Shown here in pieces: positions 8,340 to 28,857 of a stretch of DNA of 64,000 nt (position 1 is its first letter; each line of letters begins with the position of its first letter). Source of the DNA: Lytechinus pictus. Taxonomy: Eukaryota. The notes below the pieces were generated by a model that was not told the origin of the DNA, did not search any database, and saw only the letters and a list, made by a program, of their open reading frames with translations. The stretch lies in assembly GCF_037042905.1 (NCBI RefSeq), contig NC_087247.1, positions 17,980,001 through 18,044,000 on the forward strand. The letters are read 5' to 3'. The position numbers and the translations under genes were made by a program.

Positions 8340-8427
8340 ATGTCTCTCAAGTCACCGCTAGCTGGCTTCGCTCTCTCACACTACTGCATATATATTTGGT
8401 CGTCCGGGGCACAGATTCATTTCTTAG
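8340..8427 (+). CDS. Putative neuropeptide precursor, coding exon 1 (candidate signal peptide MSLKSPLAGFALSHYCIYIWSSGA/QIHFL)
   Basis: ATG at 8340, 88 nt, donor G|gtacgt, phase 1 fits exon 2. Hydrophobic stretch ends in small residues SSGA followed by Q. The h-region is only moderately hydrophobic, so this is the least certain exon. Confidence 0.55.
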
Positions 8428-9479
8428 GTACGTTTTAACACACAACTACAATCCCATTTACACCCCACACGCACGCGTACTCTCGCCCCTCATCCAAACC
8501 ACACCCTACATACACATTCAATACAACCAAGGATCACACACCCTTTTCCCCTGTCATTATAAACAAAACGGAATTTCATTATATTTATCTTCGAATTTGG
8601 TCTTCATGTTTTAAAGAGTAAAATGGAATAGTTTTGGCCAATAACACACATGCTCTCCAAATCATCGATAACATTCGGCTTTGGTGTGGGTTGTTCTTTA
8701 GCATGGATGGAAATATCTTGATTGGGGATGAATTTTAGTCTAATTAAGATGAGAATGAAATAAATTGCTCGCTAATAAGAATATTTATAGGTCTCCAGAG
8801 TAATTTACCATACAAACTGTCCGAAGCGATTTATCTTCCATCACTGTCAAATACGCTATTTAGGAAGTAGAAAAAGGATTCAATCAAACGAGGGAAAGAT
8901 CTGTTTGTTTCTCCCCGTATCCCCATTATTACATCTCAGAGTTTTTCTGTATTTGTATCAATCAATATATAACAATTTCCGGTTTAGATTATATGGCATG
9001 CAGGACAATTCTAAAAACAACAATATTTCAATGGTATAATTTTGCTAACTAGAGCAAAAATTTGTTCATGAATATTTATAAAATACTGAAATTGGAATCT
9101 CTAGGTAGTACTTTATAGCATTATCCTTAATCTATTATCATGATATAGTCTGCATGAGACCAACGAAGAAGGTTAGATTTTACTAATTTTAGTTTCAATC
9201 AATGACCTTTTAAAAAAACTGCATGATCAACCTGTATCTAGTTTGCAATTATGTACACTCCTACTTGCGATTGGAGCATCACCAAAATCTTTCTTGATTT
9301 AGGTAAAATTACTTCCATTCATTATTTTAGTTATTTCTAATAGACTTTTTTTTTAAAACAATATTACAAAACGGGTTACAGTCATCTCAACGTCGGCACA
9401 AGTTCAAGTTTTAGCTAGTGTCATGGATAACATGCTAGAAGGTCAGCCAATAAAGCTGAAATGACTACCTGGGTAAAAG

Positions 9480-9660
9480 ATTTATCATCATAATTTTACT
9501 GTTATATTATTATCATTATTTTTATCAATATCATTATCATTATTATTACTATTAAATTGTTATGAATTTTTATTATAATATTAATACTAATAGTATTATC
9601 ATTATCATTACTATTATGATTATCATTATCAGTAGTATTTTAACTATTGTTACTAATATT
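9480..9660. repeat. Degenerate (TAT/CAT)n low-complexity tract
   Basis: Runs of tattat/atcatt/actatt. Confidence 0.8.
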
Positions 9661-10226
9661 AGTTTCAATATTATATGAATAAAGAAGATAAAATTTTAGA
9701 CAGAACAAAAGTTTATTTCAGGACTGTACGATTCGTTGCTATTGTTTCCAGACTAATTTTCTTTTTTCTCATGTACAAAATAACTCTCGATTAAATATAC
9801 CGGTAATGTATAAATATCTATACACCACAAATTAGAAAATGTGATAAAAATGCAATCCAGTAACGGAGTAACGTTACTTTAATTGTACTTTGTAACCTTT
9901 AACTTTAAAAAAATAGATTGTTAGTCGGTGCGAAAATGTGAAGAAACGTCTTCTGCGCATCTGTAATCGGGTAACTCATGAACAAAATTTTGTACATCGA
10001 TGCGAAGGGCAAGAACATCTGCATGATTTTTGACACGTTTGCTGATTCTAATCAATTTGGTGGTATTAAAATAGGAGAGGTAAATATAGAGAGTACGTGT
10101 CAGCATACAGCTGCACATTGGTTACAGAAATAATCCTGTTTTATAATTGTGAACTTGCTTTCAAAGTCATGGAGAATTAATTCAAAGATAGGCCTACTGG
10201 AAATTTGCAAAAATGCATCTGCATAT

Positions 10227-10448
10227 ACTTAGTAAGGAATATGCTAAACATTTGGAGTAATTTGACTATTACTTATCATGATATATTTTGACAGCCAAAC
10301 TGATAAGAGTAATGATGATCATGATGGTGATACTAAGAAACTTAGTAAGGAATATGCTAAACATTTGGAGTAATTTGCCTATTACTTATGATATATTTTG
10401 ACAGTCAAACTGATAAGAGTAATGATGATCATGATGGTGATACTAAGA
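10227..10448. repeat. Tandem duplication, ~113-bp unit x2
   Basis: acttagtaaggaatatgctaaacatttgg...gatactaaga starts at 10227 and at 10340; few differences. Confidence 0.95.
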
Positions 10449-11055
10449 TACTATCTCATATGAGAAAAAAAACCTAAATTTTTATCCTATACTACTACCA
10501 CTGCTACTACTACTTATACTACTACTACTACAGTATTTCTACATGCTATTGCTACTTCTAATAGATCCAATATTATTTCAAGTAATAAGTTATATTAAAC
10601 ATAATGAATAATTGTTATAATGTAATACATAACAAAGAAGACTGATGGTAAAAGTTGTATTTACGTATACTACTTCAAGTAATAAAAGTCAATTAAAACA
10701 GATAAATTGTTATAATGTAAAACATAATGGGCAATACGGATGGTAAATGTTTCATTTACCTATTAACTCTTCTGAAAAAAACATAAGAACATTATTATTT
10801 TATTTGCCCCAAGTCAGGTAAAGATCTACTGAATTCCGTCTGACTAGAAGACTTATTCAATCCAGTAAAATGGCAGTTTTATACCTCAAGAAACCCAGGT
10901 GTTATGATTCATAAGTTAAAAAAAGTGAATTATTCATAGCATGATAACTAAACAGACTTGAATTTCATCTTCTTATTTCTCTCACTCATCGGACAAAGTC
11001 GTTTCCTATTAGCACCAAGTTTGTAACTTAATGCCTTGTGTTTTTGAATCCGTAG

Positions 11056-11127
11056 GGAGCTTCTGTCAAACACGTTGCACGGGTGGAAGCAGGAAGAGCG
11101 AGCTATGTTTCTACTGTCGAAGAAATC
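11056..11127 (+). CDS. Putative neuropeptide precursor, exon 2 ((G)SFCQTRCTGGSRKSELCFYCRRN(P))
   Basis: Acceptor tgtttttgaatccgtag, donor gtaagt, 72 nt, phase 1/1; four Cys spaced C-x3-C-x9-C-x2-C. Confidence 0.75.
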
Positions 11128-11939
11128 GTAAGTTATACCCCAAAATAGTCTTATTATTATGACAACGGTGAGAGATCAGCCTGATTGAGGGTGATGAGCG
11201 AGAGAATATGTTTTCATCCATTTTCCTTCGAAGTGATAATAAAGTAAACTTGATATTGCACTGCGAGGGTGGATCTTATTGGGCATGGTGGAAGGGTGTC
11301 TACCCAGGCGCAGAGTTTGGTGATTTGATAGGAATGGTTCTCCTTGGTGATTGAATGACGATGACGATGAAGGTGATGAAAATGGGGATGATAACAATAA
11401 TGACGCAAATTTGAAATATGAATTTGATGACTAAAGTGGGGTATCTTAAGAAAGTGACTAGGATTTACCTAAGCGGTTCAGGACCTGAGCTGTTGTTTTA
11501 ACATTGCTTTTAGTATTTTTTTTTACCAAATCGATGTCAAAGTGTGCGTTCCCTTTCATCGTTCTTGATATTTCCTTCTCGTAGATATAGTAGATGTTTC
11601 ATTGATTCTGACCATGAGTAATTTTAGAAACTTATATCCGGTGTTGTTTTATGAAACCATTCGTCAGTATTGCATGGATCGATTGTATCATGTTCTTGGC
11701 TATAAATAAGCTTCTTGATTCCCATTAGCAGAAGTGGTTTGCAAGTTAAAGTTATTATGTTGTTAATAACCATCTGAATAAGAATGTTCGTTAATTGTAA
11801 GGATTTCAGTTGGGTTATTGGTGATTCAGGTCATTTACAGAACTGGTAAAAAACGGGAAATTCAAGCAAAAACAGGCAACCAATTCTTCGGTGAGAAGAG
11901 AACAGTTTTATGTACCATCCCCTGCTCCACTGGAATATA

Positions 11940-12910
11940 CAGTGCGTATCAAAAAATAAGTTTACACTTAGAAAAAATTCTGTAAAATTATACATTTGTA
12001 ATATCCTGAAGATTTTTCCACATTTTAACATTGGTACAGATCCATCTAAGCAAATGACGATATAACTGTCGAAAAATATTTCCGCTTGAGTGAGCAGCAC
12101 TTACTTTGAAAAGTAAGTGAAAAATGATTTGCGCAGAACTTTGAAATAGTTATGCGAATAAAAGTAGACCTTAATCATGAAGAACACGTGGAATTTAGCA
12201 AGTAAAATTGATTTGAAGATATCTTTTACCTTTTTCAAACTTGTTTCCTTGCCCAAAACACTTCGAAGAGTGCATTGCGCCCCACACCACTCCCCCAAAC
12301 ACCGAGGCCATCGTGACGATATTTGCTTTACACCGAGCTGTGATTTACATGAAATGGCTTAGGCTTGATTTTTATTTTGTTAATCATTGTCAAGCTTGGG
12401 AAAAATGTGGAGAGACAAGTATTGAAAGAAAAATGAAATGTAAACCCACTTTAAATGATAAAAACTTAGTGAAAAATTGCTAGAATTGTCTGATATAAAC
12501 GTTTGTTCAGATTCAGTTATGTCCTCAGATCCAGCTGGCACAAAAGGCGTTATGGTTGTGCTAACTAAGTGTTAAAATGTCAATTTTGGTGGGAAAATTG
12601 TTGCAAAATGCTTGAATGTATCCGTTTTATTTCAATTGACTAAAAGTGCAAGGGAAATGTATGAGAAATGTTTCGCAGGGTAAGTTTGATTTCGCCCCTT
12701 CCCCTTGACACAGCGTGATAACGAGCATTTTTGCGAGCTTTACAAAAAATGGACGGTGCACACTCAAGTGTAACATTCTGTAAAAACTTTTACTTTCATG
12801 GGATAGATGAGACCCAAACCCAAGATTATATATGAAAAAAATACCCACATGTTGTATATTTTTTAATTCCCAGGGCTTTTTCAAAGTGTAAACTTTTTTG
12901 ATACGCATTT
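11940..12910. mobile_element. Tc1/mariner-type non-autonomous element (~970 bp)
   Basis: TA|cagtgcgtatcaaaaaataagtttacactt ... aagtgtaaacttttttgatacgcattt|TA. Confidence 0.85.
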
Positions 12911-13539
12911 TAGATTGGAGTGCTTAGGCACTGACTCTCAAAGGTTTCTCTATAACAAGAACAAAAATTAAAAGAGAAAAGGAAAAGAAAAGGGTGCAAT
13001 AGGATATACTCTTCTGAATATTTTAGTCAAACTCTATCACAAATTGATATATATGTCATATATGTCATTTAAAACGTCATCATTTTGGTTTTCTCACGAC
13101 ATTTTAGAAAGTTGGCCCCAAACGCCATGTGCGACCCCCTCAATTTTTTTTCTAGCTCATTACACGCCGCTGACTAGCTCATCTACTTTTTCCCATTATG
13201 ACGTCTGGAAGATAGCTAATACCTCATCTTCTGATTCTTCACAGAAACTTTGCATGTTCTCATATCTTCATTCGCAGACACGATGTCCAAAGGATGCGAT
13301 ATTAAGAAAGTCATTTTGGTCTCCAGATGTATGCTGAGTAAATGAAATGTCTTTTAGATTAAAAACTCGAGGGAATGTCCGTACTTCCATTTACGAAATA
13401 TTTGCGTCTAGCACTATAACACTATTAGCAATTCCCCCAACAATTCCCAGTTTGGAAAACAATGTTAGTGCGATAATTGTCATAATGTGTTAATTTAATT
13501 CTACACCGAAATTTTTAAAATCATCATCATCATAATTAC

Positions 13540-14262
13540 CATTAAATCATAAACGTATCCTTAAAGTCAGTAACATGTACCGCTTACAACTTTTCCAATT
13601 CATGTATCAGGTAGATAGAAATAGTGTACCTAATGTCTTACAAAATCAATTTATGAGAAACAATAATTTGCATTCATTGAATACGAGACAGTCAAATAAC
13701 TATCACTTACCTAAAAGAAGATCAGTATTTTCTAGCAAAACTGTATTTTTCACAGGACCCAAACTCTGGAATTCTCTGGACAGAGATATAAAAGAGGCAA
13801 CTAATCTGAACCGATTTAAATTACTCATCAAAAAATTTCTTCTGAATTCTTACTGATTCAATCAAATACTTTGTGAATACTATCCACGGTAGTGTTGATT
13901 ATTTTAAGGTCAATATATTATTTTGTATATGATGTATATACCATCGTGTTACAGTGTTTATATATACTGTATATAATTATATATATATACATTTATAGAG
14001 TTTTGCTGATTATTTTGCTCTACTTATATCATATTACCCTTGTATAAAATGTTGATAGGGGGTCTACATCTTACAAGCTTTGCATATCAGTAGGCCCCTC
14101 CACTTTTTTTTTATTTCGTTGGTACGTTTCAAACCTGCATAATTTATGTTATGCAGTTGATGCATCTTTTCATTGTAAAAATGCTTTTTAATGAAATGTA
14201 CTTTGGGGATTTGTGGAATATGAATATATCAATAAATAAAATAAAAATAAATAAAATGAAAA
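13540..14262 (+). mobile_element. 5'-truncated CR1-group (Crack/L2-like) LINE 3' end
   Basis: ORF 13575-13856 has the typical ORF2 C-terminus (HSLNTRQSNNYHLP...TVFFTGPKLWNSLD...FKLLIKKFLL*), then an AT-rich 3' UTR and an (AATAA)n tail. Confidence 0.85.
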
Positions 14263-14835
14263 TATTTTGACAAGTGATATTCCCAAGATACCATTTCTCT
14301 TCTATTTTGTTATTTTATTCAGCTAATATAATTTCTCTGCATTGAGAACTTTAAATTGCTTGGAAATTGTGTTGTGCAATGCCCCGCAAAATAGCAATAT
14401 TCTAATCTAAGATATAACCTTTCTCTGCCCCTTATATCCCTACTATGTGTGCCACAGTGTGTTCACAGTTCAGTGTGGAACACAGTGTGAAAACACCTTC
14501 ACACTGTTAAATTTGAGCATTTCAACAGTGTGAATCACATATTCATATAGTTGATCATGTGAACATATTTTAATCACATTGCGTTCTTTCAAGCAGGGAT
14601 TATACGTCAAATTCGTTATTTTCTACAATTCGCAAAGTAAAAAGCAATTATATGTCCGTATTAAATTTATGATGTCACGTAAGAAAGTCGATATCAATAC
14701 TTAGTTTAATTTTTGAGAAAAAAAAAATGCCCATCGATGATCTATGTAATACTTTATGATTACTACGTGCACCAGATTGAAAAGTCATGCAAATGTTGAT
14801 ATCAATGAAAATCTCTTCACATGCTCGTGAACTTA

Positions 14836-14985
14836 TGCTGCAGTCACATTTCCCCTACGGTGCGGCGGTCGTACGGCGAGTCAAAAACAGCGGTTTTATT
14901 CATTTCTATTCAAACGAAGTATATAGCTGGTACAAAAAATGTCGACTCGCCGTACGGCCGCCGTAGGGGAAATATGACTGCGCCA
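14836..14985. mobile_element. PIF/Harbinger-like MITE
   Basis: TIR gcagtcacatttcccctacgg..cgtacggcgagtc / gactcgccgtacgg..ccgtaggggaaatatgactgc; tta/cta flanks. Confidence 0.8.
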
Positions 14986-17510
14986 CTAGGTTGCGTGTTT
15001 GGCATAAACATGGATTGACAATCACGATCCCATGGACACAATCATTTTCAATCTTAACAGTCTTCTTTCTTGAATTCAAATCAATACTGCCTGGACCAGG
15101 GAGTGTGTCACAATGAGATAAGTAGTTGTCAAACAGTCACATCCAGGTGTAAACGCGCAAGTTAAATTTAACGTATCTTCTCATTGGTCCGAATCATGAG
15201 CGGATTTTTTATTTTTTATTTTTTTTTTAAAGATTCGAGAGACTTCAAGGGAACAAAACGACCCTCCTATTGGAGTTATTGTAGGCTACTGTGCACAAAA
15301 AAACAAATAAAAATAAATAATAGAAAAATGGGGGAACGGGTTGTAAAGACACATGTACATGTATTTCTTACTTTCTGATTTCTTATTGCATGGTATCGCT
15401 CGTTTTTCCCCACCATCTTCCTGGTCTTTTTATTATAAGAGCGACCCTTACAATAAAAAAGTTCTAGCTCTACTGTTCCCGATGGCGGCACAGTAACGGA
15501 TTCAAGATTGTATTGAAGGGGGGGGGGGGTCATAGATGTGTGATTCGCCACGCACATCATTTGAAAGGTTAATTAATTATAGGAAGGCCATAATGTCTTT
15601 CATATTATTGTAATGAATAGTCAACACAAATATGCCCAATTTATGAATCATCACTTAAATTCATGATCTCATAAGTTGTTCGTGTTGGCCTATGACAGTA
15701 TGAGCAATAAGAAGTGCTTGCACTTTATACTAATGAATTTCATACCCAAATTTTCCCCATGCAAATCCTTCATGAAACAATGCTAAATCTTATAACTCCA
15801 GAATGAATTGACGATATATTTAATTGCTTAGCATTACCCAAGGGAAATCAAATCGATGCTCGAAGAATGCACTTGGTCAATATTAATGAAGTAAGTCCCC
15901 TTTTTTTAAAATCGTGTACCATGTTCGGCAAGTTGTACAGAAGAGTGGATATCCACTAGTCTGATCGGAAGTATAAATCTTTATACAAACTCCTTCCCAA
16001 ACACAATCAAATATTCGTCTCCGGGGAGATTCTTGGAGGAATAAAACATTTGTGGAAATCAATTCACTCTTCTTCAGGCTCAACAAGACATTATTACTGT
16101 GTGATCTATCAGTCAATATTGCATCATTATTATTGACCTGGAAAGTACATGGAGACACATTCAAATTTTCACTTAATTTTCAACAATTGAGATATTAATG
16201 GAAATAACTTTCGATTTAAAATATAAGAGTGATGATAACTGCATTTTATTAACTGAATGGGCTAGATTAGCTCGAAATCAGAATTCATAATTTGTTTTGT
16301 AATTATATAGAGACCAAGTTAAATGCGTAAGGCCTTCTCGCCTTCAAAAGTGCAAAATGTTGGTTGATGAACAAATAGTGATGACGTCCCATGAGTGAAT
16401 GATTATATATTCTCTATTACTTAAGGTAGGAACCAAGTGAAAAATATATATCTCTAATTTTTGAAAAGGGACGACAATTAAAAAAGAGATATACGTGTTT
16501 TGGAACGGGAAATGTGGGAATATATATTGAATGTTGTTATTATTCTTATTAGATTCTCGTACTTGATCCTCGCCGTTGTGTAAAATATTCAATCGTCACC
16601 ACTACAAAGATACGAAGAATATAGTTATGCTTAATATGGTGACATAACTTTTAAGTTTGCCGGGTTACCGTGTAAAAAAAGCATGTTTCATGGCTGAATT
16701 TCAACATTACTCCAAATTTTACCCCCCCCCAAAAAAAAATGCACCGGGGGGGGGGGGGGGTAAGAGGAGAAAAAGAAAGAAAATGGAGACTAAAAAAGGT
16801 AGGATATGACGTTATGAGGTATACAAAAAAAAAAACATTTTGTCAAAATCTGTCACAAAACTAGATTTTCATTTTTTTAAAGTTAAATTTTTGCTCGCTC
16901 ATTTCGCTCGCTCGGGACTCTTAAGAAATGTTGTCATAGACCATGTATTGCCCCCTCAGTTACTTCAGTGCGAAAGAATATATGCTTATATTTTGCAATG
17001 GCAGTTAACAAAAAGGGCACTTGCTTAATACCGGCTTAATGATTATGCCAAATAGACTTTTCAGAATACGTTCACATCTACATCTGATTTCACGTGTAAT
17101 GAATGGATGTTTCAATGAGAGGGAAAGACAATCTTCGTATGTCGAGACGTGGAGCGTCTGTGCAAAGTTTTAAATCATCGTACTTATTTCAAATCCTTGG
17201 CTATATGCTACCCTCCTTATGAGAATTAAATCGAATTTATATATCCAATGGTCATGACCATATAGCAACTGTTGTATCGGGGGGGGGGTGGTTAGAAAAG
17301 GGAAAAGGGTTGCATATAAAAAAAGGAAAATAAAAAATGAAGATAAAAGGGCAAAGGAATAAAGGGGCGGAAAAGGAATACCATCGAAGGTGATTAATAC
17401 CCCCGTCATATGCTGTTACCATGGTAATGAAGATTCCAACACATTTGGAAAATGGTTGTTGCATGTCTTTACCCAGGGATGAATTTTCGTGCCAAATTTC
17501 GATTTGTGAT

Positions 17511-17872
17511 ATACTTATTTCCTTCAAGAATTCCAACAAAGAGTCCTTAAAATATTTCCTTTTCAAACTCAAATATCATAACTTTTCATCTCTAGCTTAA
17601 CCCTCGTGCGTGCATTGATAGCTTACTTAGATACCCATTGTTGGGAGTACTTCTCCCTAAAATATCCTGATTTCTGGTCTCAATATCAATGATACTTATT
17701 TCCTTCAAGAATTCCAACAAAGAGTCCTTAAAATATTTCCTTTTCAAACTCAAATATCATAACTTTTCATCTCTAGCTTAACCCTCGTGCGTGCATTGAT
17801 AGCTTACTTTGATACCCATTGTTGGGAGTACTTCTCCCTAAAATATCCTGATTTCTGGTCTCAATATCAATG
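17511..17872. repeat. Near-perfect 181-bp tandem duplication inside a hAT-like element ending at 18489
   Basis: atacttatttccttcaagaattcc... starts at 17511 and at 17692; one visible mismatch; host element ends tacgccactg. Confidence 0.95.
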
Positions 17873-20800
17873 ATAATGAGCTCGCGTTTCGCGCTCACAA
17901 CTGTTTAAAACTGTTTAGATATACATCATGTTAAGGATTACAAAAAACGCTTAGAATAATCAGTCTAAAGATATTAATATTGAAAAAAAAAAGGCTTGCG
18001 CTTCGCCCTCGTATTAGGTCGATTCATTTAATGAGATTTCTGTCATTTATGACTTCCTAAAAAGGGCCTTTTAAATGTTCCCTTTCGGGTCTAAATATCG
18101 ATCATTATCAGCTCGCGTTTCGCGCTCATATTCACTGTTTAGTTAGATACGAATCATGTTTATGATTACAAAAGAGCAACTTAGAATATCCCGTTTTAAC
18201 GTCTTAAGATTGAAAAATATTCGCAGTCGAATAGATGTTATCTTTTATTTTGACTGGTCCTGTGTTTACAAAGAGTATGTATATGATTTTGCATTCTCTT
18301 TTTTGTCACATTATGGGCACTGACGAAGAGTGTGACGTTACCTTTCATTTTTAAAAGCTACGCTCCTTTTAAAATCTATGATTTTATTTCTACGGCATTT
18401 TAATAAACCAGTTGTGATTATTATACACTTTGAAAGGGGTGAGATTTTAGCCCTTGCCCCTTGCGCCTTCTGCCCAAGATACGCCACTGTATAACAGTCA
18501 TATGCTCTACTACAATTTGAAACAAATCTGGCCTTTATCAAAAAATAATGTTTTGAAAATATCAAAAATTTCGATAATACTATTCTTATAGTTAATTTGC
18601 CCCTCAAATGAAATGATTCTATTCGTTCATAATCTCATAACATGATCAAAACACGAATTTATTCCGAATTCGGATCAGGGACCATTCGTACGCTGAGCAG
18701 TGGCTCAAAACGCACAATAAGCCGTCAGACAATGTTATCTGTAATGAGCCATAATGGCAATTTGGCCTTTGAATATCAAAATTTTGCCACCGATGTCCTG
18801 GCACTTCGGAACACGGACTCCAGCTTCCCATGAGTCCCATAATGACTAATTCCAGCTGTGCTCATGTAATGAGCAAAATTATTAGTTCCATTGTTTTTTC
18901 AGGATTTTCTAATAAGCTCGTGATGATAATGTTGGCGCAACGACACCCCTTGATGATATTTTCTTTCAAATTCCAGATATAAGATGCTACAATGATGAAA
19001 ACAATTTGATTTTTTCAGAGCTTGCATACTAAAATTATTCAGGTAGTAACAGTGTTGCATTAGAGACCGGGTTTGCAGAAAATATAAAACAGGAAAGGGG
19101 TTGCTTTCCTTACCTCATTCCTTTTACATGATTTATTTCTTCTCTTCTCCGAGTAAAGATTAATGACCCAAGGACATCTCTTTGTATTCTACCTTATAAT
19201 TTACCGGCTAGTGCTTAGGCAACCATATTGATCGATATGTTCTTTTGAGTCATTTATAAGTTGAAAAACGTCTTATCTTATGAAGACCAATGAATATTGT
19301 GCACTGACGTTTACTTACACGCGGCCAAAGTATGTGACACGGTCAATGTAACGAACTCATATCACGATGACAAGTGTCTCTCTTAACACGTTTTCTGTTT
19401 TTCTGTCCGTCAATTTGCCCTCTTCTTCACCCCCCCCCCCCGCCTTCTCTCTCTACCCCCTCTTAGTTTCTATCTCCCCCGCTCTCTCTCTCTCTCCCTT
19501 TATTCTTGCTGATGAAACTTTCGTAGAAGTGATTGAAGCACTTCTTGCAAATAAACTGACTATAGATTTATGGTCAGCTTGATATTCTATTTCTTGTCAG
19601 AAAGCAACGGAATGCTTTCAAAGACACCAACACTCGCAGTACAACACAATACACATTTTGTAAAGCGTTAAGCGAAATTTTACTTTAAAGAAGCGACGTA
19701 CCATTGAAAACACTCTCACACCCCAACATACATCCACGCACCAGCAGGCATATATACATTCACCTCATACTCTAATAGACCACCACGTTGGTATTTTGTT
19801 CTTTCCTTTTACATGTTTTAACTTCTTACAGACGCCCTTGGAATAAGATAAAATGATACTTTACTTTACTAAGATACATTTTTATCTCTATTCTGTCACG
19901 TGAAAAAGAAATGTGCCGCACATGTTTAGATCTACGAAGCAAATGCATTAAAGGTCGTAGATTAAATTTGTTTATGAAACTGTTTATGATTAAGACAGCC
20001 TACATATTAGCTTTAATCCTCTATCTTTCTTTGTCTATTTTCCTATTAAGCGCATAGAGACGCCCATAGACAGTGATATGTGCTATACAAGCAACGTCGT
20101 ATTATAATTAAAGAGCGTTCAAATTTTGGTAGTAAATGTAAATTTTACAAAAAACATACTTTTCAGGTCGTGTTTTTTTTCTCAGTTGTATTATTGGTGT
20201 TTACTGCATTTGGCAATGTTATCTAGGTCCAGTTGTACAGATTATTTATTATAGAAATATATGCCGAATTATGTATATAATTTTTTTGGTGGCGAAATAA
20301 ATATACAATCTTTAAAATATCGGATAAAATGAAATACAATTTTATGTTTCGCATGAAATGTGTTTTCAACTTCGATTCAACACTTTTTATTATGTCAACA
20401 ACAAAAAAACTGACCTACAAAATTAAGACTATTCTGGTAACGTTCAGTTTAATAAATAAACAGCCTATATGAGGTGTGAAAAGTGAGAGATAAGAATGGA
20501 CATACCTATTTGGCCATATGGGAATAAAGTAAATATTCAAACATACGACAGAATGATCTGAGCATGGCAAGACAACTGTCGCTCTGAGGTGCTCCAGTAT
20601 TATTAAAAATTTATAATAGGCTTTCCACATTGTCACATGCATCTGACAGCTCAAACATTTCTTCAATATTCTTACATTATACATCTTAGCGTCCTGTCCT
20701 ACCTGTATAGCCATATTCCGTAAGTTTAAAATACATTTTGGATATATATATATGTGTATATAAATGTATATATATATATATATATACTTAAATAAAAGAG

Positions 20801-20979: not shown

Positions 20980-21203
20980 TTTAACAAATATATATATATA
21001 TTTGTTAAACTTCTTCTTCAGGAGTTTAACAAATATATATATATATATATATTTGTGTAAAGTTATACATGTACAACAGCTTTGGCAACTCTTTTATTTA
21101 AATATTGTAAAGAAATGGATGAAGAGAACAATGGTAGGCGTAGCTTAAATCAAGGTTCCCCAGAGCTATCTACCCTTTGGAAAAATTGGTGATGCCGAAA
21201 AAA

Positions 21204-21275
21204 TGTCTCCGCCGGGAATCGAACCCGGGCCCCCAGCTTTGAACGCCGGTGCCTTAACCACTAGACCACAGAGAC
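21204..21275 (-). tRNA. tRNA-like gene with TCA anticodon (tRNA-Glu-like body; opal-suppressor-type anticodon) embedded in a repeat
   Basis: GTCTCTG TG GTCT AGTGGTTA AGGC A CCGGC GT-TCA-AA GCTGG GGGC CCGGG TTCGATT CCCGG CGGAGAC A, then TTTTTT. All four stems pair; A and B boxes intact. Confidence 0.75.
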
Positions 21276-22058
21276 GGGTTAGTGGCTAGGGCGACCCCGA
21301 TCCGATTGACCGGCGGAGACATTTTTTCGGCATCACCAATTTTTCCAAAGGGTAGATAGCTCTGGGGAACCTTGAAGTAAGCTACGCCTACCATTGTTCT
21401 CTTCATCCATTTCTTTACAATATTTGAATAAAAGAGTTGCCAAAGCTGTTGTACATGTATAACTTTACACAATTGTATACTTTCTCCCATACGTGTACTG
21501 TATCAAAGCAATAGCTTTGATCCAGCTGAAGCATGGCGGCTTGTCATTGTTCGAAACCCACCTTCACCCGACAAAGGAAATTATAATTGGTATAGTGTCG
21601 AAAATCTGTCTATCTGACGGTCACTGGGGGCCCGGGTTCGATTCCCGGCGGAGACATTTTTTCGGCATCACCAATTTTTCCAAAGGGTAGATAGCTCTGG
21701 GGAATCTTGATTTAAGCTATGCCTACCAATTGTTCTCTTCATCAATTTCTTTACAATATAATATATGTCACTCTTCTATCAGAAATTTGTCTCATTCGTA
21801 AATTGTGACAACTGGTACTATCTTGATATCTCTCAGTCATCGATATGTTCTTCCTTTTGTATATTCCCTATAGACATATCATTATTCACAAATGTCACTT
21901 GGTTCATATCACTAAATACGTTAATTTGGACAGTCGTTCAAAGGCAGTCATATTAAAGCTAAAATGACGTGTGGATGATTTTCTTTATAACATGTATAAT
22001 CTTTTAAACGTAATAATAATGATCATAAAATACATAGAGAAATTTTGAAATACGCGAC

Positions 22059-23547
22059 CAGTGGCTTACCGTGGGTCACGGCTCTGGGGGGGCACCAGCA
22101 AAATTTTTGAGTCACTTAGTGAGCACGCGAAGCGCGCTCAGTTGCCACGTATAGGCGTACTGACCTAATAGAGACATTTAATGGACGGTGCCATTAAACG
22201 GATATGTATCTCACTGATTAATTAATGCGAGCGTGAAGCGCGAGCTGAAATTTTTTTATATTCAGACGTTAAAAGGGACACTATAAACACATTTTTATAA
22301 TCATGTTACGTACCTGTCTCGCTAAACAACAATGCGAGCGCGAAGCGCGAGCTGAAATTCTTCTATATATTGACACCAAGCAGGGACGTTTTAAGGACTA
22401 TATTTTAGGAATCCATTCAGATTATACCTTGGTCATATAATGCGAGTGCCAAGCGCTTGTTGATTTTGTTAGAATTACATCTTAACACATGAAACATTTG
22501 TAGTCGTTGTAATCATGATTAACATGCGCATCTCACTAATCAATTATTGCGAGCTGAAAATGTTGGAAGTTCAGACCTGAAAAGGGCCATTTTAAGGCTT
22601 GTTTGTAGGAACTCACGAAGACCATACGTATTTCACTAACCAAATGATGCGAGCGCGAAGCGCGAGCTGAAATTTTTGTATATATTGACCCCAAACATGG
22701 ATATTTTAAGGACTATTTTTAAGGAATCCATTAAGTGTATATATATCTCACATTAGTCATCTAATACGAGTGCCAAGCGCTTGCTGATTTTGTTAGAATT
22801 ACATTTAAACACATGAAGCACTCTTTGTAGTCATTGTTATCATGATTACCATACGCATCTCACTAATCAAATATTGCGAGCACGAAGCGCGAGCTGAAAA
22901 TTTTGGAAATTTAGACCTGAAGAGGGGCATTCTAAGGCTTGTTTGTAGGAATTCACTAAGACCATAAGTATTTCACTAACCAAATGATGCGAGTGCGAAG
23001 CGCGAGCTGAAATTTTTTTATATTCAGATCAGAAAAGGGGATATATTTTGAGGACTGATTTTAGGACTAAGCAGACATATCTAACCAATCCACTAATGCA
23101 AACGTAAGCACAGAAAGGAAATGTTATATATTAAGACCTTAAAATGGGGCAATCACTTTAAGTAGTGATGAAAAAGAAGCACATGTCACTGCATAAAACA
23201 ATAATAACTCGAAGTGCGAGGAAATGTATTTGGTGTATATTGACTTGAAAACGGGAGGTTTTAGTATAACATGATTATATATCTCGTTAAACAGACTATG
23301 CGAGCCCCATGTGAAGACATAGGCCCTGAGCAAATTATGTTTCATAAAGTTATGAAAAAATGCTTCTTATGTAATATAACATTACATAATTATAATATAA
23401 TATAACATTATAATGAACAATAATTTCTTCTTTCCCACTACGTTTCTCTTCCTTTCTCCCTCTTTTTCTCCTTTTCCCGTTTTTTTTTTGGCCAGCCGAT
23501 GGGGGGGGGGGCACGTGCCCCTCATGCCCCCCGTAGTTACGCCACTT
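22059..23547. mobile_element. hAT-family non-autonomous element with internal ~320-340-bp tandem units
   Basis: Termini cagtggcttac / gttacgccactt; 8-bp TSD tacgcgac/tacgcaac; recurring gcgagcgcgaagcgcgagctgaaa motif. Confidence 0.85.
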
Positions 23548-23899
23548 TACGCAACATTGTATATCCCAATAAGTGATCCAGCGTAACCGAAACAAGAGGG
23601 TAGCTTTTTTAGCAAGCACTATCACCTGTTAACTGTGTGACGAAGAAAATTCCCGAAATAAGAATAAATGCATACTGTACGATTTGCTTCCTTATGAAAC
23701 CATCTAAACCGTGAAGGCTATTTGCATCCCCAATTGTCAAAGGAACAGATTTTGTCTATAAATGTCCATATTTCGGCATGATCACAATGCGAATAAATAC
23801 CAAATCCTGAATTCGTAACTACTTGTTAACACAGACAGTGAAATACTGAAATAATGGAATGCATTTCAAAAGGAAATAATTCCAAGTTCCATAGACCGA

Positions 23900-24176
23900 G
23901 GGCCCATTTTATAAAACTTGTTATAATAAAAAATATTCAATAACAGTTTAAAGCCTCTGAAATCCTTCAAGTTGATAGGTTGATAGTAATTTTGTTACAG
24001 AAGTTGTGCATTTGTTAAAATAACAAGTTTTCGTGAAACGGGACCCTGGGCGCCGTAACACAAGAATTAGCGATTAATCGTTGCACGCGCATTTTTTCTC
24101 AGTAGACTGACCGGGAACCAATCAGAATTGTCCTTTCAAATTAGCGATCAATCGCTAACCTTTGTGTTACGGGACC
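23900..24176. mobile_element. Two abutting PIF/Harbinger-like MITEs (23900-24045, 24049-24176)
   Basis: gggcccattttataaaacttg / caagttttcgtgaaacgggacc; ggcgccgtaacacaag / ctttgtgttacgggacc with ctg on both flanks. Confidence 0.7.
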
Positions 24177-24196
24177 CTGAACCGTATTTGACAATA

Positions 24197-24492
24197 GGGA
24201 GTTTTCGCAGTTGCAACGTGTACGGCTTCTGCAACGTGATAAATCTATTAAAAATGCAAGTCAATCACAATGGGCAGGCAGGGCAGCTGAAAGGGTTTTA
24301 TCGTAAGTTTGTGAACTGGGTCAGCAGATTGTTCGAAGATTCGGACCGGAAGAAAATGTCGTTTGTCCAGAGCCCAGAACGTCACTGTTTTGATTCAACG
24401 ATTCTCGACAAAGACTTCTTTGTCATGGAGAGCATCTAACAATAGATACTCTGTGTTCCAGAAGGTGTCTGCGTAGTGTTGCAAATACTCCT
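24197..24492. mobile_element. Degenerate ~300-bp MITE family member (also 32802-33106, 47156-47447, ~47820-48290)
   Basis: gggagttttcgca / gcaaatactcc termini; internal motifs shared with the other copies (aatctatt, cgacaaagac, cagctg). Confidence 0.6.
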
Positions 24493-25762
24493 TTTTAACG
24501 CTACTAATCATTTACATGTCCTTCATTTTAATTCATCATATCATCTTTATTGATACGTCCGATTTCGCTTTCCCTAATGAGATAAATAACCCATTATGAC
24601 CCATTTTCAGTCATACAATGCCAAACAAATTAATTGAGATGGTTCATTAACGGTAAAAAAAATCTAGGTCATTCCTTCATTTCGATACTGTGCGCGGGTG
24701 AATATGGGATGCGGCCGATTATGGTTTATCTTCATGCTTTTAGAAGAGAAATAATTATGAATTCTGTTTAGTATTGTACACCAACAAATGATGGCAGAAT
24801 TGATCTTAAAAAAAAAACATCAGGGGATGTACTTTGAAAATATAACCTTTGCTGTATTCCTAAATTATTTTGTCTTATAATATCACGAAGATGATAAATC
24901 TTAACACATAATTTAAATTGAGTTTGTTTGGTTTGCTTTATGGCACGTCCGTGGTGTTTATAACGAACTTGGTTTGTCATATTTTCAAGCATTTTGCTTA
25001 AAATTACAATCTCTTTCGCATGTGATGTTATTTTATGTTCAGTAATGTATCTGATTTATTGTCAAAGTCTCTCTGTGATGTTTATGATAGCTTATTATTT
25101 TGTTATGCAGAAGAAAAATATATCAAATTAAGTTTCAATGAGGCAGCTTGCAAGTGGAGAATGGGATATAAAATCACGTCATAACTACTAATAATCGCTT
25201 TATTTTGTGACAGAAAAGAATATTTCATAGAAATATGTTTTTAGAGGCCTTTTTATGTTGAATTTATTGATCGTAATACTCCTCGAGTCTAGTACTCGTT
25301 ATTTTTAGATAATTTAGGTCATTTGAGTATGTGAGCAAATGGAACGTTCAACAATACCATTCAACTAAAAACCTTTGTGATTCTAAATGAAATGAATGAA
25401 ATATGTAGTTTGAATGGTTCACCAGTAACATCGGATGCGCCACTCACCTGGATTTATTGTATTTCAAATGTCTTGAAAATGTGAAAGTGTAATTATTCTA
25501 ATTCTGGAGTATTTTCTTAGAATGTAGTCAGTTTCGTTTTAAACTTTTGGATTTATATCATTATCATATTTGTCTGTATGCAATTGGTGCTTTGTGACTA
25601 TTAATTTATCAGTCGGAAATTCCTCAATTTACCTTATAGTCTATTGATAATAACAGACACGTTTGTTTTATGTTGCATTTCTATGGATATACATCTGAAT
25701 TAAAATACTCAAAACCAGCTATGGATTTTGCCATCAATAATGTGTAAAGATGATTATATTAA

Positions 25763-26344
25763 AGGGATGGTCCGGGCTGAAAATGTATATATCTTAATAC
25801 ATAGAGTAGAATTCACTGAGCAAAGTGCCGAAAATGTCATCAAAATCGGATAACAAATAATAAAGTTATTGAAGTTTAAAGTTTAGCAATATTTTGTGAA
25901 AACAGTCGTCATGAATAATCATTAGGTGGGCTGATGATGTCACATCTCCACTTTCCGTTTTCTTATGTTATTACATAAAATCAGATTTTTTTCATTATTT
26001 CATACTTGTGTAAATAAAATGTCTCCCTAATAATGAAATAAGTTACAGCAGTAAATATCTAATGCACTAAATCAGTTGTCAATCCAATTTTTCTAGTTCT
26101 TGGAGGAAAAAATTTGAATAAACCTAATTTTATATGATAAAATACAAAAGAACAAGTGGGGGTGTGACATAATCAGCCCACCTAATGAATATTCATGCCG
26201 ACTGTTTTCACAAAATATTGCTTAACTTTAAAATTCAATAACTTTGTTATTTGTTATCCGATTTTGATGAAATTTTCGGCATTTTGCTCAGTGAATTCTA
26301 CTCTATTTATCAAGCTATAAACACTTTCAGCCCGGACCATCCCT
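25763..26344. mobile_element. TTAA-targeting (Kolobok-like) non-autonomous element
   Basis: TTAA|agggatggtccgggctgaaa ... tttcagcccggaccatccct|TTAG; ~190-bp inverted arms. Confidence 0.85.
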
Positions 26345-26492
26345 TTAGGTAACAGAGCTTTTATAGGACTTACAGATGGTTGTAAACGATCGAGCAACCT
26401 TGAAAAGTGAATTCATGAAAATGACTGGATAACAAGAACATGATTTATTTTATTATGTGACACACAGTATTATTTTTCTCTCTCGCTCTTAG

Positions 26493-26554
26493 CGGCTGGT
26501 AAAAGATCGGGAAGCGGAGGTAGTACAATAAAGGAAGATGGGACTGTAAATGAG
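26493..26554 (+). CDS. Putative neuropeptide precursor, exon 3 ((P)AGKRSGSGGSTIKEDGTVNE)
   Basis: Strong acceptor tttttctctctcgctcttag, donor GAG|gtaagg, 62 nt, phase 1/0; supplies the G-KR amidation/cleavage site. Confidence 0.8.
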
Positions 26555-27080
26555 GTAAGGAAATCTATACACCGATCTATTTCCCACTTTCAATACTATA
26601 CTCGAAAACCCAGCACTGTATGGTTTAATTTGCCCACCCCTTTATCGTTTAAGTCACTTACTTCATGCATGTCCTGATTCTAAATTCATTCAGTTGGCAA
26701 ACGAAATGATTACCAAGGTTCTAAACTCATTAATTTGCCAAAATTTATTCTTTCGAAATTCAATCACTATTTTGTGTCACCGAATGCATGCCCCGAATTC
26801 GAATCTAAATTGTAAAAACGTTAACTTTAATTCTATTATGAATGAATCGTGATTTATTCATTATGGAATTTATGCTTGGTTTCTTAATGGAAATATTTAT
26901 CATTAACTAATAATAAAACATTAAACTTGCTTTTGTCCAAATTAAGTAAATTATATCTGATAACTTATAATTGATTTATGTAAGTGATCTCATTTCTAAA
27001 CTTTATTCATTTTGAAAACGTTTGCGTTTTTAGGCACCAGTGTATAGGGAAAATACTGTATATACATATATTTCGTACAG

Positions 27081-27206
27081 TAGCCTTAAAAACTAGTGTA
27101 CTGAAGCTTTTCGACATGCACTCATTGGAGTAAAATCGAGTGAATAGCTAAAGCGTTTCCGATGAATTCTTGTCGGAAAGCTTCAGTATGTCCGTTTTTA
27201 AGGCTA
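27081..27206. repeat. Imperfect palindrome (MITE remnant)
   Basis: tagccttaaaaac..tactgaagcttttcgaca / tgtcggaaagcttcagta..gtttttaaggcta. Confidence 0.6.
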
Positions 27207-27708
27207 TTTTACGATTTTGCGGTACCAAACACTCTTTTTCGTATTTTTAATGCAGTTCAATATTAAGCATATGTACATCTCTGCTTACTTTAAGTAGGAA
27301 GTCTCGTTACCAGATTTTTCATGAAAACCTCCCACCTTATCTACGAGAACTTGGGCCCACCAGCTGGCAAACATACATTTTAAGTATAAAAATGCTCTGA
27401 TCCACGTGAATTATGAGGGTGTCCAAGAATGTATGGCCGTTGTATTATGCCGTTGAAATGTGTCACTTCATTAAAACAAATCATGTTGTTGGACAATTTT
27501 GATCGCAGTGACATTGCCAACTTACCTTTTGCATGTTCAACCTACCCTTTTCATGTAAAGTGCAATCATTTCTTCATGCAGTTTCTAGTTTAGAATTGGA
27601 TTTGTTAGGTCTAGCTTTTTATATCTTGAAAAGTGTATTTGTATTTTTTAATCGTATTTTGATTATCTTTAACATGATAATTCATTCAGTTTGATTTCTA
27701 TCTTACAG

Positions 27709-27813
27709 AGACAAACTAGCTTAAATTTTGGATCGGCTTTTGACAACTCAGCATGTGTTTTGGATTCAATCGCCTCACAATTACCAGCTGTTTGGCAAGA
27801 TAGATTAGTAGAT
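27709..27813 (+). CDS. Putative neuropeptide precursor, exon 4 (RQTSLNFGSAFDNSACVLDSIASQLPAVWQDRLVD)
   Basis: Acceptor tttctatcttacag, donor gtaagt, 105 nt; only the phase-0 frame is open, matching both neighbours. Confidence 0.8.
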
Positions 27814-28815
27814 GTAAGTACCTTCCGAATACTGTTTTTATTTTTAAGAAGACGAACTCCTTTACGAAGTTTTGGTTTGATTTGATAAAAAGATGATATT
27901 ATCGACTAATCCATAAATGAAATGGGAGCAAGGGCGATCCGAGCAATTCGACTAGCAAAAAAGAGGTTTCTCTACAAAATGTAGATCCTTTTGGTTATAT
28001 TTATCCATTTTGCCACACCTAACAGAATCCCAGGGGCTGCTGCCTATGGAAAATAACCCACTCAGCACCCACCAGGAAGATTTTCCTGCATCCCAGCACC
28101 CCCGCTTCCTAAGGCCATGGGGGAGGGGACGTGCCCCCTTGAATTTCGAATTTGTACAGCAAGAAATTTTCATCGCCCTTAAGAGACAATAATCTCACAA
28201 ATTCGCGCCCAACCACATTAACAATGTTTCATTATTAAAATCTTGAATTTGCCAGTTACATCATTTTTCACGAACTGATTCTTTGTGATGATTTGAATCC
28301 GACTCTTAAATTAGATTGATTAAATTGCTGGTGAATTGTCATTTTTTTCCATTCAGGCCTTCTAAAAACTTATATGTACATGTATATTATAACAGAGGTT
28401 AAATCAGAAAGCTAAAGATACAATCATGAAATCCTTTTCCGTGTATAAGAAAGACAAAAATACAATTAAAAAAATAGCTGGAACAAGACTGTTCCTGTCA
28501 ATATATTTTTTTTTAATTTGCCATATTTATAAGGTGTCTTTCAAAAAATGTTTATATTCATCATGATAATTAGCAAGAATTATGTATGTATTTGCACACG
28601 TTGCTTTAAAAAAGTTCCTTAAAGTATATTTTGAGCCCATTTAAAAGTTCCTAGTATGGTGGTATTATGAAGTTACTACGAAACTTCATTTAATATTTAT
28701 CAAAGTGCAGTTTATTTAATCTTTTATATCACGTCAATCTGATGATATTTTTTGTCCCCCCCCCCCTCTCTCTCTCTCTGTCTCTCTTTCTCTATCTGTC
28801 TCTGTCATTTCCTAG

Positions 28816-28857
28816 GTTATTCGAAGCGCCTTGCAAGAGGATGACACGTGGTACTAA
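28816..28857 (+). CDS. Putative neuropeptide precursor, terminal coding exon (VIRSALQEDDTWY*)
   Basis: Long (CT)n polypyrimidine tract then catttcctag acceptor; phase 0; TAA at 28855-28857. Confidence 0.7.
   Translation, partial: VIRSALQEDDTWY

What the first reader, a model, noticed from the sequence alone, without database searches (positions are those of the whole stretch)
8340..28857. Hidden 5-exon gene encoding a candidate Cys-bridged, amidated neuropeptide precursor
Seen in sequence: five small exons with canonical GT-AG sites and compatible phases (88+72+62+105+42 = 369 nt) join into a stop-free 122-aa ORF: MSLKSPLAGFALSHYCIYIWSSGA-QIHFLGSFCQTRCTGGSRKSELCFYCRRNPA-GKR-SGSGGSTIKEDGTVNERQTSLNFGSAFDNSACVLDSIASQLPAVWQDRLVDVIRSALQEDDTWY*. 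The P-A-G-K-R site forms only across the 15.4-kb intron 2. Established knowledge: signal peptide + peptide + G-KR + acidic spacer is the canonical prohormone layout (convertase cleavage, PAM amidation, N-terminal Gln cyclisation). Inference: the mature product is a 31-aa pGlu...Pro-Ala-NH2 peptide with two disulfides (C-x3-C-x9-C-x2-C). It loosely recalls the four-Cys CCRFamide/HFAamide-type precursors but lacks RF, so it may be a divergent or undescribed family. Such micro-exon genes are easily missed by annotation.
Basis: partly seen in the sequence, partly recalled or inferred. Interest (0 to 1): 0.85.

Follow-up and report, generated by a model that had tools for sequence, protein, structure and literature searches.

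The report
Sea urchin four-cysteine peptide precursor gene

Summary
The five exons, their GT-AG borders and the 122-aa translation are in the sequence exactly as described.

Exons 2-5 are real. They match S. purpuratus "uncharacterized protein LOC105446332" (124 aa, E 7e-49). Exon 2 sits in RNA contigs with its exact borders. One contig runs from position 11127 straight into exon 3, so the P-A-G-K-R site is made by splicing.

Its RNA depth is zero. The contig upstream of exon 2 encodes ...LVLLSSTVVSG, the end of the S. purpuratus signal peptide. That sequence is absent from the window, and synteny places the real exon 1 upstream of position 1.

The predicted product is therefore (G)SFCQTRCTGGSRKSELCFYCRRNPA-NH2, 25-26 residues, not a 31-residue pGlu peptide.

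Between the two urchins the peptide plus GKR shows 0 nonsynonymous and 6 synonymous changes, while the spacer is only 60% identical. That is the conservation pattern of a prohormone.

No paper I could search describes this protein. It resembles crinoid "PCNP7" in layout, cysteine spacing (C-x3-C-x9-C), peptide length and intron phases. The sequence statistics for that link are only marginal.

Neuronal expression, processing and amidation were not tested.

The parts
1..11055 (+). 3' part of intron 1. The real exon 1 (5'UTR plus signal peptide) lies upstream of the window.
   Evidence: The RNA contig letters before 11055 encode LVLLSSTVVS(G). That 30-mer is absent from the window at up to 3 mismatches. 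S. purpuratus exon 1 lies 3.4 kb upstream of the block that aligns to window 334-658.
8340..8427 (+). It is NOT part of the transcript; it is a chance ATG-to-GT stretch inside intron 1.
   Evidence: RNA depth is zero in all 4 runs. It has no match to the S. purpuratus locus. It is one of 18 chance candidates and is weakly hydrophobic.
11056..11127 (+). Exon 2 (72 nt, phase 1 to phase 1). It encodes (G)SFCQTRCTGGSRKSELCFYCRRN plus the first base of Pro, and so holds all four cysteines of the predicted peptide.
   Evidence: It is 100% identical in protein to S. purpuratus, with 6 synonymous differences. It is held with these borders in 3 RNA contigs, and RNA runs hold 0.83 of its words.
10857..11261 (+). 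Conserved block around exon 2. The intron flanks, about 200 nt upstream and 134 nt downstream, are conserved as well.
   Evidence: blastn gives 78% identity over 407 nt to S. purpuratus L001:20084-20473.
26493..26554 (+). Exon 3 (62 nt). It completes Pro, then encodes A-G-K-R (amidation and dibasic cleavage site) and the start of the variable spacer.
   Evidence: The loose end behind 11127 in the X10 contig equals 26493-26522 with one mismatch. It matches S. purpuratus exon 3.
27709..27813 (+). Exon 4 (105 nt, phase 0 to phase 0). It encodes the end of the spacer and most of the conserved C-terminal region, including a fifth cysteine.
   Evidence: tblastn to P0001 gives E 2e-17. blastn gives 87% identity. 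dN/dS for the C-terminal region is 0.14.
28816..28857 (+). Exon 5 coding part: VIRSALQEDDTWY plus the TAA stop.
   Evidence: 12 of 13 residues are identical to S. purpuratus. The S. purpuratus gene has the same phase-0 intron in front of it.
28858..29410 (+). 3' UTR. The end is approximate. It is conserved to about 29106, and poly(A) signals sit at 28893 (ATTAAA) and 29388 (AATAAA).
   Evidence: A blastn block at 28793-29106 is 78% identical to S. purpuratus. Contigs extend 576-846 nt 3' of exon 2.

Best explanation
The window holds exons 2-5 of a real, transcribed and conserved sea urchin gene. It is the orthologue of S. purpuratus LOC105446332 and encodes a secreted precursor of about 124 aa with a prohormone layout.

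Exon 1, which lies upstream of the window, encodes a classical signal peptide ending ...LVLLSSTVVS-G.

Inferred steps:
1. Signal peptidase frees a peptide starting at G or S, immediately before FCQ.
2. A prohormone convertase cuts after the K-R of P-A-G-K-R. This site is assembled only by splicing exon 2 to exon 3 across 15.4 kb.
3. Carboxypeptidase and peptidylglycine alpha-amidating monooxygenase then give (G)SFCQTRCTGGSRKSELCFYCRRNPA-NH2.
4. That peptide has 25-26 residues, net charge about +4 and probably two disulfides (C-x3-C-x9-C-x2-C).
5. A 64-residue C-terminal piece with a conserved helical acidic end is released alongside it.

The most likely role is an intercellular signalling peptide, either a neuropeptide or a peptide hormone, acting on an unknown receptor. 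It may be the echinoid counterpart of the crinoid candidate neuropeptide precursor PCNP7.

Shown here: the gene, exons 2-5, the 2/3 splice, transcription, the signal-peptide end, and selection on the peptide. Inferred: cleavage, amidation, disulfides, neuronal expression and function.
For: - Orthologue: P0001 is found at E 6.8e-49 with 87% identity, and it carries a proper signal peptide. The S. purpuratus gene has the same five-exon plan over 21 kb and is collinear with the window.
- RNA: exon 2 is held at 0.83 of its words in 7 RNA runs under two organism labels. Contigs of 512-1289 nt hold exon 2 with exact borders, and the loose ends read the exon 3 start on one side and LVLLSSTVVS(G) on the other.
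- Selection: the peptide plus GKR (29 codons) has 0 nonsynonymous and 6 synonymous differences, about 1e-4 under neutrality by my arithmetic. The spacer is 60% identical. The C-terminus is 91% identical with dN/dS 0.14.
- Frame: only this frame is open across exons 2-5.
- Class: the nearest language-model feature neighbours of both the urchin protein and crinoid PCNP7 are single-peptide prohormones (CCHamide, CCAP, GnRH, spexin, neuromedin B, corazonin, galanin) at scores of 0.88-0.91. No defence-peptide family appears among them.
- PCNP7: it has a signal peptide directly followed by C-x3-C-x9-C-x3-C, with 23 residues from C1 to the amidated residue as here, then GKR, a spacer and a helical C-terminus. 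The Anneissia gene is also a roughly 30-kb micro-exon gene, with a phase 1-1 peptide exon and a phase-0 intron 12 codons before the stop, against 13 here.
- Similarity scores: BLASTP to Antedon PCNP7 gives E 8e-5, and full-length hhalign gives P 5e-5.
Against: - No tissue information could be read because the runs are coded, so neuronal expression is untested.
- No peptide-level evidence exists for cleavage, amidation or disulfides.
- There is no Pfam hit, no PDB relative, and no relative beyond the S. purpuratus protein in an exhaustive phmmer of 1.84 billion representatives. The two weak hits are repeat proteins.
- The PCNP7 link is weak once the signal peptide is removed. hhalign gives p of about 0.03-0.06 by column shuffling. 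Only one of six pairwise comparisons is significant, and the C-terminal halves alone are not. BLASTP against Anneissia gives E 0.48.
- The third Cys spacing differs (2 against 3), and the second intron sits 4 codons away from its crinoid counterpart.
- Internal RK and RR pairs could lead to different products.
- The AlphaFold model has low confidence (pLDDT 52.7).
- The same precursor layout is used by some arthropod antimicrobial peptides (my own knowledge of the tachyplesin and gomesin precursors).
Confidence: 0.68

Rival explanations
1. This is a host-defence or other non-neuronal secreted peptide. A cationic, disulfide-stapled, amidated peptide is made in coelomocytes or epithelia, and the acidic C-terminal propeptide neutralises it until release, as in the tachyplesin and gomesin precursors.
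For: The predicted peptide has net charge +4 and four Cys. The layout signal, peptide, GKR, acidic tail is shared with arthropod antimicrobial peptide precursors (my own knowledge, not tested here). The tissue of expression is unknown.
Against: The peptide is 100% conserved between two urchins that have dS of about 0.4, whereas defence peptides usually evolve fast. The crinoid look-alikes carry only about +2. The language-model neighbours are all neuropeptide prohormones. The C-terminal region is conserved in sequence, not just in acidity.
Confidence: 0.13
2. This is a small secreted protein whose working part is the conserved C-terminal helical domain, or the whole 92-residue chain. On this view the G-K-R is not used as a processing site.
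For: The C-terminal 44 residues are 91% identical with dN/dS 0.14. Two helices are predicted there. A fifth, unpaired Cys could make dimers.
Against: The N-terminal peptide plus GKR is even more conserved, with no amino-acid change. Gly-Lys-Arg right after a Cys-rich stretch is kept in the crinoid look-alikes. The spacer between the two parts is free to vary, as in prohormones. Conserved associated peptides are usual in GnRH-, CCAP- and CCHamide-type precursors.
Confidence: 0.12
3. One reading: exon 1 at 8340-8427 is used, giving a 122-aa precursor and a 31-residue pGlu...Pro-Ala-NH2 peptide.
For: There is a good donor (TAG|GTACGT), the phase is compatible and the ORF is open. An alternative first exon used in an unsampled tissue cannot be strictly excluded.
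Against: RNA depth is zero over it in four runs, while the exon 2 contigs carry a different upstream sequence that matches the S. purpuratus signal peptide. It is not conserved with S. purpuratus. Hydrophobicity is weak, and 18 chance candidates of the same kind exist.
Confidence: 0.03
4. This is a non-coding or chance ORF, and the exons belong to a non-coding RNA.
For: There is no Pfam domain and no homologue beyond one urchin species in very large databases.
Against: Changes in exon 2 are synonymous only, and dN/dS is 0.14-0.20 elsewhere. The ORF is open in both species. The signal peptide is conserved.
Confidence: 0.02

Closest known systems
Strongylocentrotus purpuratus uncharacterized protein LOC105446332 (P0001; genome record AAGJ06000006.1)
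   Same: It is the orthologue. It has five exons with the same phases, and 87% protein identity over exons 2-5. The peptide plus GKR is identical, and the locus is collinear with the window.
   Different: It comes from a different species (exon DNA 82-87% identical). Intron 2 is 8.7 kb there against 15.4 kb here. The S. purpuratus intron 3 has a GC donor where the window has GT. It carries no functional annotation.
[quoted passage not shown] 2022, PMC9793003; Anneissia LOC117103332 = P0004)
   Same: The signal peptide is directly followed by a four-Cys peptide with C-x3-C-x9-C spacing. There are 23 residues from the first Cys to the amidated residue. GKR, a variable spacer and a helical acidic C-terminus follow. 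The gene is a 20-30 kb micro-exon gene. The peptide sits on a phase 1-1 exon, and a phase-0 intron lies 12-13 codons before the stop, in front of a last exon that starts with V-I.
   Different: The last Cys spacing is 2, not 3. The amidated end is ...RRNPA rather than a hydrophobic or aromatic residue. The second intron lies 4 codons earlier. The urchin gene has one extra intron in the spacer. Sequence similarity is marginal without the signal peptide. The paper states that no homologue in other echinoderms was known.
CCHamide / GGNG-type and echinoderm CCHamide-like (Arnp25) precursors
   Same: One cyclic amidated peptide sits right after the signal peptide, followed by a dibasic site and a C-terminal associated peptide. 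A CCHamide cluster is the top language-model neighbour, at score 0.91 with 186 shared features.
   Different: Those peptides have two Cys and 11-14 residues. There is no sequence similarity and no Pfam CCHa1_2 hit. The atlas output itself flags the family assignment as probably wrong.
Orexin-A type precursors
   Same: A four-Cys, two-disulfide amidated peptide lies directly after the signal peptide in chordates (text of PMC4772807).
   Different: Ambulacrarian orexin-type peptides have six Cys, and S. purpuratus already has two such precursors. The Cys pattern differs and the hydrophobic amidated C-terminus is absent.
Tachyplesin / gomesin-type antimicrobial peptide precursors (my own knowledge; not tested here)
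   Same: They share the layout of signal peptide, short cationic four-Cys amidated peptide, Gly-Lys-Arg and acidic C-terminal propeptide.
   Different: They are arthropod haemocyte products with a different Cys spacing. The peptide here is fully conserved between species, and its feature neighbours are neuropeptide-like.

Membership tests
Neuropeptide / peptide-hormone precursor (general definition used in echinoderm surveys, e.g. PMC9793003) | N-terminal signal peptide | tested here: met
   The orthologue starts with a basic n-region (R6, H7, K8), then a 15-residue hydrophobic core and SSTVVSG (Kyte-Doolittle maximum 3.23). The window species' RNA encodes LVLLSSTVVS(G) just before exon 2. No SignalP run was possible.
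Neuropeptide / peptide-hormone precursor (general definition used in echinoderm surveys, e.g. PMC9793003) | Peptide bounded by a dibasic cleavage site, with C-terminal Gly as amide donor | tested here: met
   P-A-G-K-R is formed by the exon 2/3 splice, which is seen in RNA. It is identical in S. purpuratus.
Neuropeptide / peptide-hormone precursor (general definition used in echinoderm surveys, e.g. PMC9793003) | Bioactive peptide more conserved than the spacer | tested here: met
   There are 0 nonsynonymous and 6 synonymous changes in the peptide plus GKR. The spacer is 60% identical.
Neuropeptide / peptide-hormone precursor (general definition used in echinoderm surveys, e.g. PMC9793003) | Expression in neurons or endocrine cells, and the mature peptide detected | not testable with these tools
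   The runs are coded and carry no tissue labels. No peptidomics data were accessible.
Crinoid PCNP7-type precursors | Four-Cys peptide directly after the signal peptide, with spacing C-x3-C-x9-C-x3-C | tested here: inconclusive
   Here the spacing is C-x3-C-x9-C-x2-C. The first three Cys are in register and the fourth is one residue early. The C1-to-amide length is 23 in both.
Crinoid PCNP7-type precursors | Significant sequence similarity over the precursor | tested here: inconclusive
   BLASTP gives E 8e-5 against Antedon but 0.48 against Anneissia. hhalign on full-length sequences gives P 5e-5 local and 3e-4 global. With the signal peptide removed, p is about 0.03-0.06. The C-terminal halves are not significant.
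Crinoid PCNP7-type precursors | Shared gene structure | tested here: met
   Both genes have a phase-1 intron 3-4 codons before C1, a phase-1 intron at or near GKR (4 codons apart), and a phase-0 intron 12-13 codons before the stop, ahead of a last exon starting V-I. Both genes span 20-30 kb. Phase-1 introns after signal peptides are common, so only the last intron is specific.
CCHamide / GGNG family | Two-Cys cyclic peptide of about 13 residues, and the Pfam CCHa1_2 domain | tested here: not met
   The peptide has four Cys and 25-26 residues. There is no Pfam hit even at E 10. The only link is a language-model neighbourhood.
   No reference sequences were obtained, and the terms are absent from PMC3890597. 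The peptide ends in Pro-Ala-amide, so it has no RF.

The most novel reading that the evidence does not exclude
The gene is the echinoid member of an ancient, echinoderm-wide family of four-cysteine amidated neuropeptides. So far that family is known only as the crinoid-specific candidate PCNP7. Crinoids and echinoids sit on either side of the deepest split among living echinoderms, so the family would date to the echinoderm ancestor. It would then be an unplaced signalling system with an unknown receptor, and possibly a diverged branch of a bilaterian family.
Probability: 0.4. Interest if true: 0.6.

Novelty: new member of a known kind. Interest (0 to 1): 0.5.

Why it matters
Sea urchins are a reference group for reconstructing how neuropeptide signalling evolved in deuterostomes, and their catalogue of precursors is thought to be fairly complete. 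This gene is a strongly conserved, expressed precursor with the full prohormone layout. It has only an "uncharacterized" label in S. purpuratus, and I found it in no searchable paper.

If its peptide is confirmed, it adds a new disulfide-rich amidated ligand to screen against orphan receptors. If the link to crinoid PCNP7 holds, that crinoid-only candidate becomes an ancient echinoderm family.

It also shows a practical point. The defining amidation site exists only across a 15-kb intron, and the signal-peptide exon lies more than 11 kb upstream of exon 2. Genes of this kind are therefore easy to mis-model at the 5' end.

Tried and rejected
- **True exon 1 inside the window.** tblastn with the S. 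purpuratus N-terminus gave only a poly-Leu reading of the (TAC)14 microsatellite at 10477-10524. An in-frame stop directly precedes it, so it is a false lead. blastn with the S. purpuratus exon 1 region found nothing, and the RNA-derived 30-mer is absent.
- **Distant homologues.** The word-indexed search found only P0001. An exhaustive phmmer found only P0001 plus two repeat proteins, which I judged spurious. A search with Anneissia PCNP7 found only itself. Pfam gave nothing. The best PDB hits were designed alpha-repeat proteins at E 1.8 or worse, which is meaningless.
- **Structure.** Single-sequence AlphaFold gave pLDDT 52.7, too low for a fold search, so none was run.
- **Literature.** Peptide strings and the LOC number have no full-text hit. 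The starfish, brittle star and sea cucumber surveys describe no matching four-Cys amidated precursor. The CCRFamide/HFAamide terms were not found in the Platynereis paper.
- **PCNP7 homology tests.** Tests without the signal peptide were only marginal, so I do not file the gene as a proven member.

Full report
**1. The observation**

Each internal border is AG...GT with a pyrimidine tract. The lengths are 88+72+62+105+42 = 369 nt, and the joined sequence translates to the quoted 122 residues plus TAA. The window is AT-rich (34% GC) and holds no long ORFs, as expected for an animal locus with long introns.

**2. Exons 2-5 are a real gene**

A search with the spliced protein found one protein, S. 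purpuratus "uncharacterized protein LOC105446332". It has 124 aa, E 6.8e-49 and 87% identity, but covers only 76% of the query.

The S. purpuratus protein starts instead with a textbook signal peptide: a basic n-region, a 15-residue hydrophobic core, then SSTVVSG.

Its gene has five coding exons over 21.1 kb, at L001 10001-10094, 20277-20348, 29010-29071, 30331-30435 and 31097-31138. Exons 2-5 have the same lengths and phases as in the window.

blastn between the two loci gives collinear blocks. The exon blocks stop at or near the exon borders, at 26490-26563 and 27677-27821, and 28793-29106 covers exon 5 plus the 3'UTR.

**3. Transcription and the key splice**

Seven RNA runs under two organism labels hold 0.83 of the sampled words of 11046-11137. 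Four runs of a third label, probably DNA, hold 1.00. RNA runs also hold about 15% of the words of 27600-28950, roughly exon 4 plus exon 5 plus UTR.

I laid three sets of RNA contigs and one raw-read run on 5400-11300. Exon 2 appears with exact borders (11055/6-11127, no mismatches) inside contigs of 512, 1220 and 1289 nt.

In the 1289-nt contig, the 30 letters that follow 11127 are the first 30 letters of exon 3 with one mismatch. The 11127/26493 junction that creates P-A-G-K-R is therefore real.

They rest on orthology and conservation.

**4.

- RNA depth over 8158-8551 is zero in all four runs.
- In the 1289-nt contig, the 30 letters before exon 2 translate, in frame with the shared G, to LVLLSSTVVS-G. 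This is the end of the S. purpuratus signal peptide.
- That 30-mer is not in the window at up to 3 mismatches.
- S. purpuratus exon 1 lies 3.4 kb upstream of the block that aligns to window 334-658, so the real exon 1 is expected upstream of position 1.
- A count of ATG-started open stretches ending in a phase-1 G|GT gives 18 such candidates in the 11 kb upstream of exon 2.
- A tblastn match at 10477-10524 is a poly-Leu reading of a (TAC)14 microsatellite with an in-frame stop directly before it, so it is not an exon.

**5. What the product looks like**

The signal peptide ends in V-V-S-G, with small residues at positions -1 and -3 for either candidate cleavage site (established signal-peptidase rule). 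The secreted chain therefore begins G-S-F-C or S-F-C.

The predicted peptide is (G)SFCQTRCTGGSRKSELCFYCRRNPA, followed by G-K-R. That makes 25-26 residues with net charge +4 and Cys spacing C-x3-C-x9-C-x2-C.

Cleavage after K-R, removal of the basic residues and conversion of Gly to a C-terminal amide are inferred from established prohormone chemistry. They were not observed.

A low-confidence AlphaFold model (pLDDT 52.7) puts the two Cys pairs on two helices separated by the GGSRKS loop, and predicts two helices in the C-terminal region. I treat this only as a hint of a disulfide-stapled helical hairpin.

**6. Selection**

Between the window and S. purpuratus:
- The 29 codons of peptide plus GKR have 6 synonymous and 0 nonsynonymous differences (dS 0.43).
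- The 20-codon spacer is 60% identical (dN/dS 0.20).
- The 44-codon C-terminal region is 91% identical (dN/dS 0.14).

From the site counts, six of six changes falling on synonymous sites has a neutral probability of about (18.5/87)^6, or roughly 1e-4 (my arithmetic). An invariant peptide, a free spacer and a conserved associated peptide is the pattern expected of a prohormone.

**7. Comparison with known families**

Sequence and profile searches found nothing:
- There is no Pfam family, even at E 10.
- There is no meaningful PDB relative.
- An exhaustive phmmer of 1.84 billion representatives found nothing beyond the protein itself and two repeat proteins.

Language-model feature neighbours of the urchin protein are all single-peptide prohormones: CCHamide (0.91, 186 shared features), spexin, GnRH, neuromedin B, CCAP, corazonin, galanin and PrRP. 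The same holds when the signal peptide is removed. These are leads, and the tool itself warns that the specific family is probably wrong.

The peptide strings and the LOC number occur in no searchable paper. The starfish, brittle star and sea cucumber surveys describe no matching four-Cys amidated precursor. Echinoderm CCHamide-like/Arnp25 peptides have two Cys and 11-14 residues, and ambulacrarian orexin-type peptides have six Cys.

**8. A closer look-alike: crinoid PCNP7**

The crinoid survey (PMC9793003) lists "predicted crinoid neuropeptide precursor 7" in three species, and states that no homologue in other echinoderms was known.

Shared features:
- In PCNP7 the signal peptide is followed directly by C-x3-C-x9-C-x3-C, then four residues and GKR. 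The distance from the first Cys to the amidated residue is 23, as in the urchin. A spacer and a helical C-terminus follow.
- Anneissia PCNP7 is LOC117103332, and its gene spans 30.3 kb.
- By my reading, the Anneissia exons are 3001-3067, 14813-14899, 32529-32671 and 33249-33287.
- Intron 1 is phase 1, four codons before C1 (three in the urchin).
- Intron 2 is phase 1, inside the Arg of GKR. In the urchin it sits inside the Pro four codons earlier.
- The last intron is phase 0, 12 codons before the stop, in front of V-I-L-E.... The urchin has the same phase, 13 codons before the stop, in front of V-I-R-S....
- The urchin gene has one extra phase-0 intron in the spacer.
- The language-model neighbours of PCNP7 are the same prohormone families.

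The statistics are mixed:
- BLASTP of the urchin protein against Antedon PCNP7 gives E 8e-5, but against Anneissia 0.48.
- hhalign of urchin against crinoid profiles gives P 5e-5 (local) and 3e-4 (global) on full-length sequences.
- With signal peptides removed, it gives only p of about 0.03-0.06 against column-shuffled controls.
- In Smith-Waterman shuffles only Spur-Amed is significant (p 0.002-0.007), and the C-terminal halves alone are not.

I therefore rate homology with PCNP7 as plausible, at about 40-50%, and not shown.

**9. Verdict**

Four of the five exons and the intron-spanning amidation site are right. The first exon, the N-terminus and the peptide length are wrong.

The prohormone interpretation is well supported at the level of gene, layout and selection. 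It is untested at the level of tissue, processing and function.

The main rivals are a defence-type secreted peptide and an unprocessed small secreted protein.

The gene is not unannotated in the clade, but it is unrecognised as a candidate neuropeptide precursor in everything I could search. I class it as a new member of a known kind, of moderate interest.

Noticed in passing
window 5400-6187: This is a multi-copy repeat. RNA contigs and reads pile up here with summed word depths in the thousands, many variant letters, many internal joints and many loose ends. It looks like a transposable element or SINE-like family that is abundant in transcripts. It is unrelated to the peptide gene.
   Followed up: no
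L001 29072 (S. purpuratus) vs window 26555: The S. purpuratus orthologue has a GC donor (GAG|gcaagt) at intron 3, where the window species has a canonical GT (GAG|gtaagg).
   Followed up: partly
window 10477-10531: A (TAC)14 microsatellite reads as poly-Leu in one frame and mimics a signal peptide in tblastn (E 0.03 with the N-terminal query). An in-frame stop directly precedes it, so it is a false exon.
   Followed up: yes
window 334-658, 3876-3944, 4770-5158, 13307-13436, 15758-16064, 33546-33674, 35655-35917: These are conserved non-coding blocks, 65-78% identical to and collinear with the S. purpuratus locus. They lie in introns 1 and 2 and downstream of the gene, and could be regulatory elements.
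   Followed up: no
window 21053-21760 (inside intron 2): The scan's earlier notes on this window describe a tRNA-like cloverleaf with a UCA anticodon inside a repeat arrangement. It lies within the 15.4-kb intron 2 and is not part of the transcript described here.
   Followed up: no
window 10227-10452 and 17511-17875: Two young tandem duplications sit in introns 1 and 2: 110 bp x2 at 94% match, and 181 bp x2 at 99% match.
   Followed up: no
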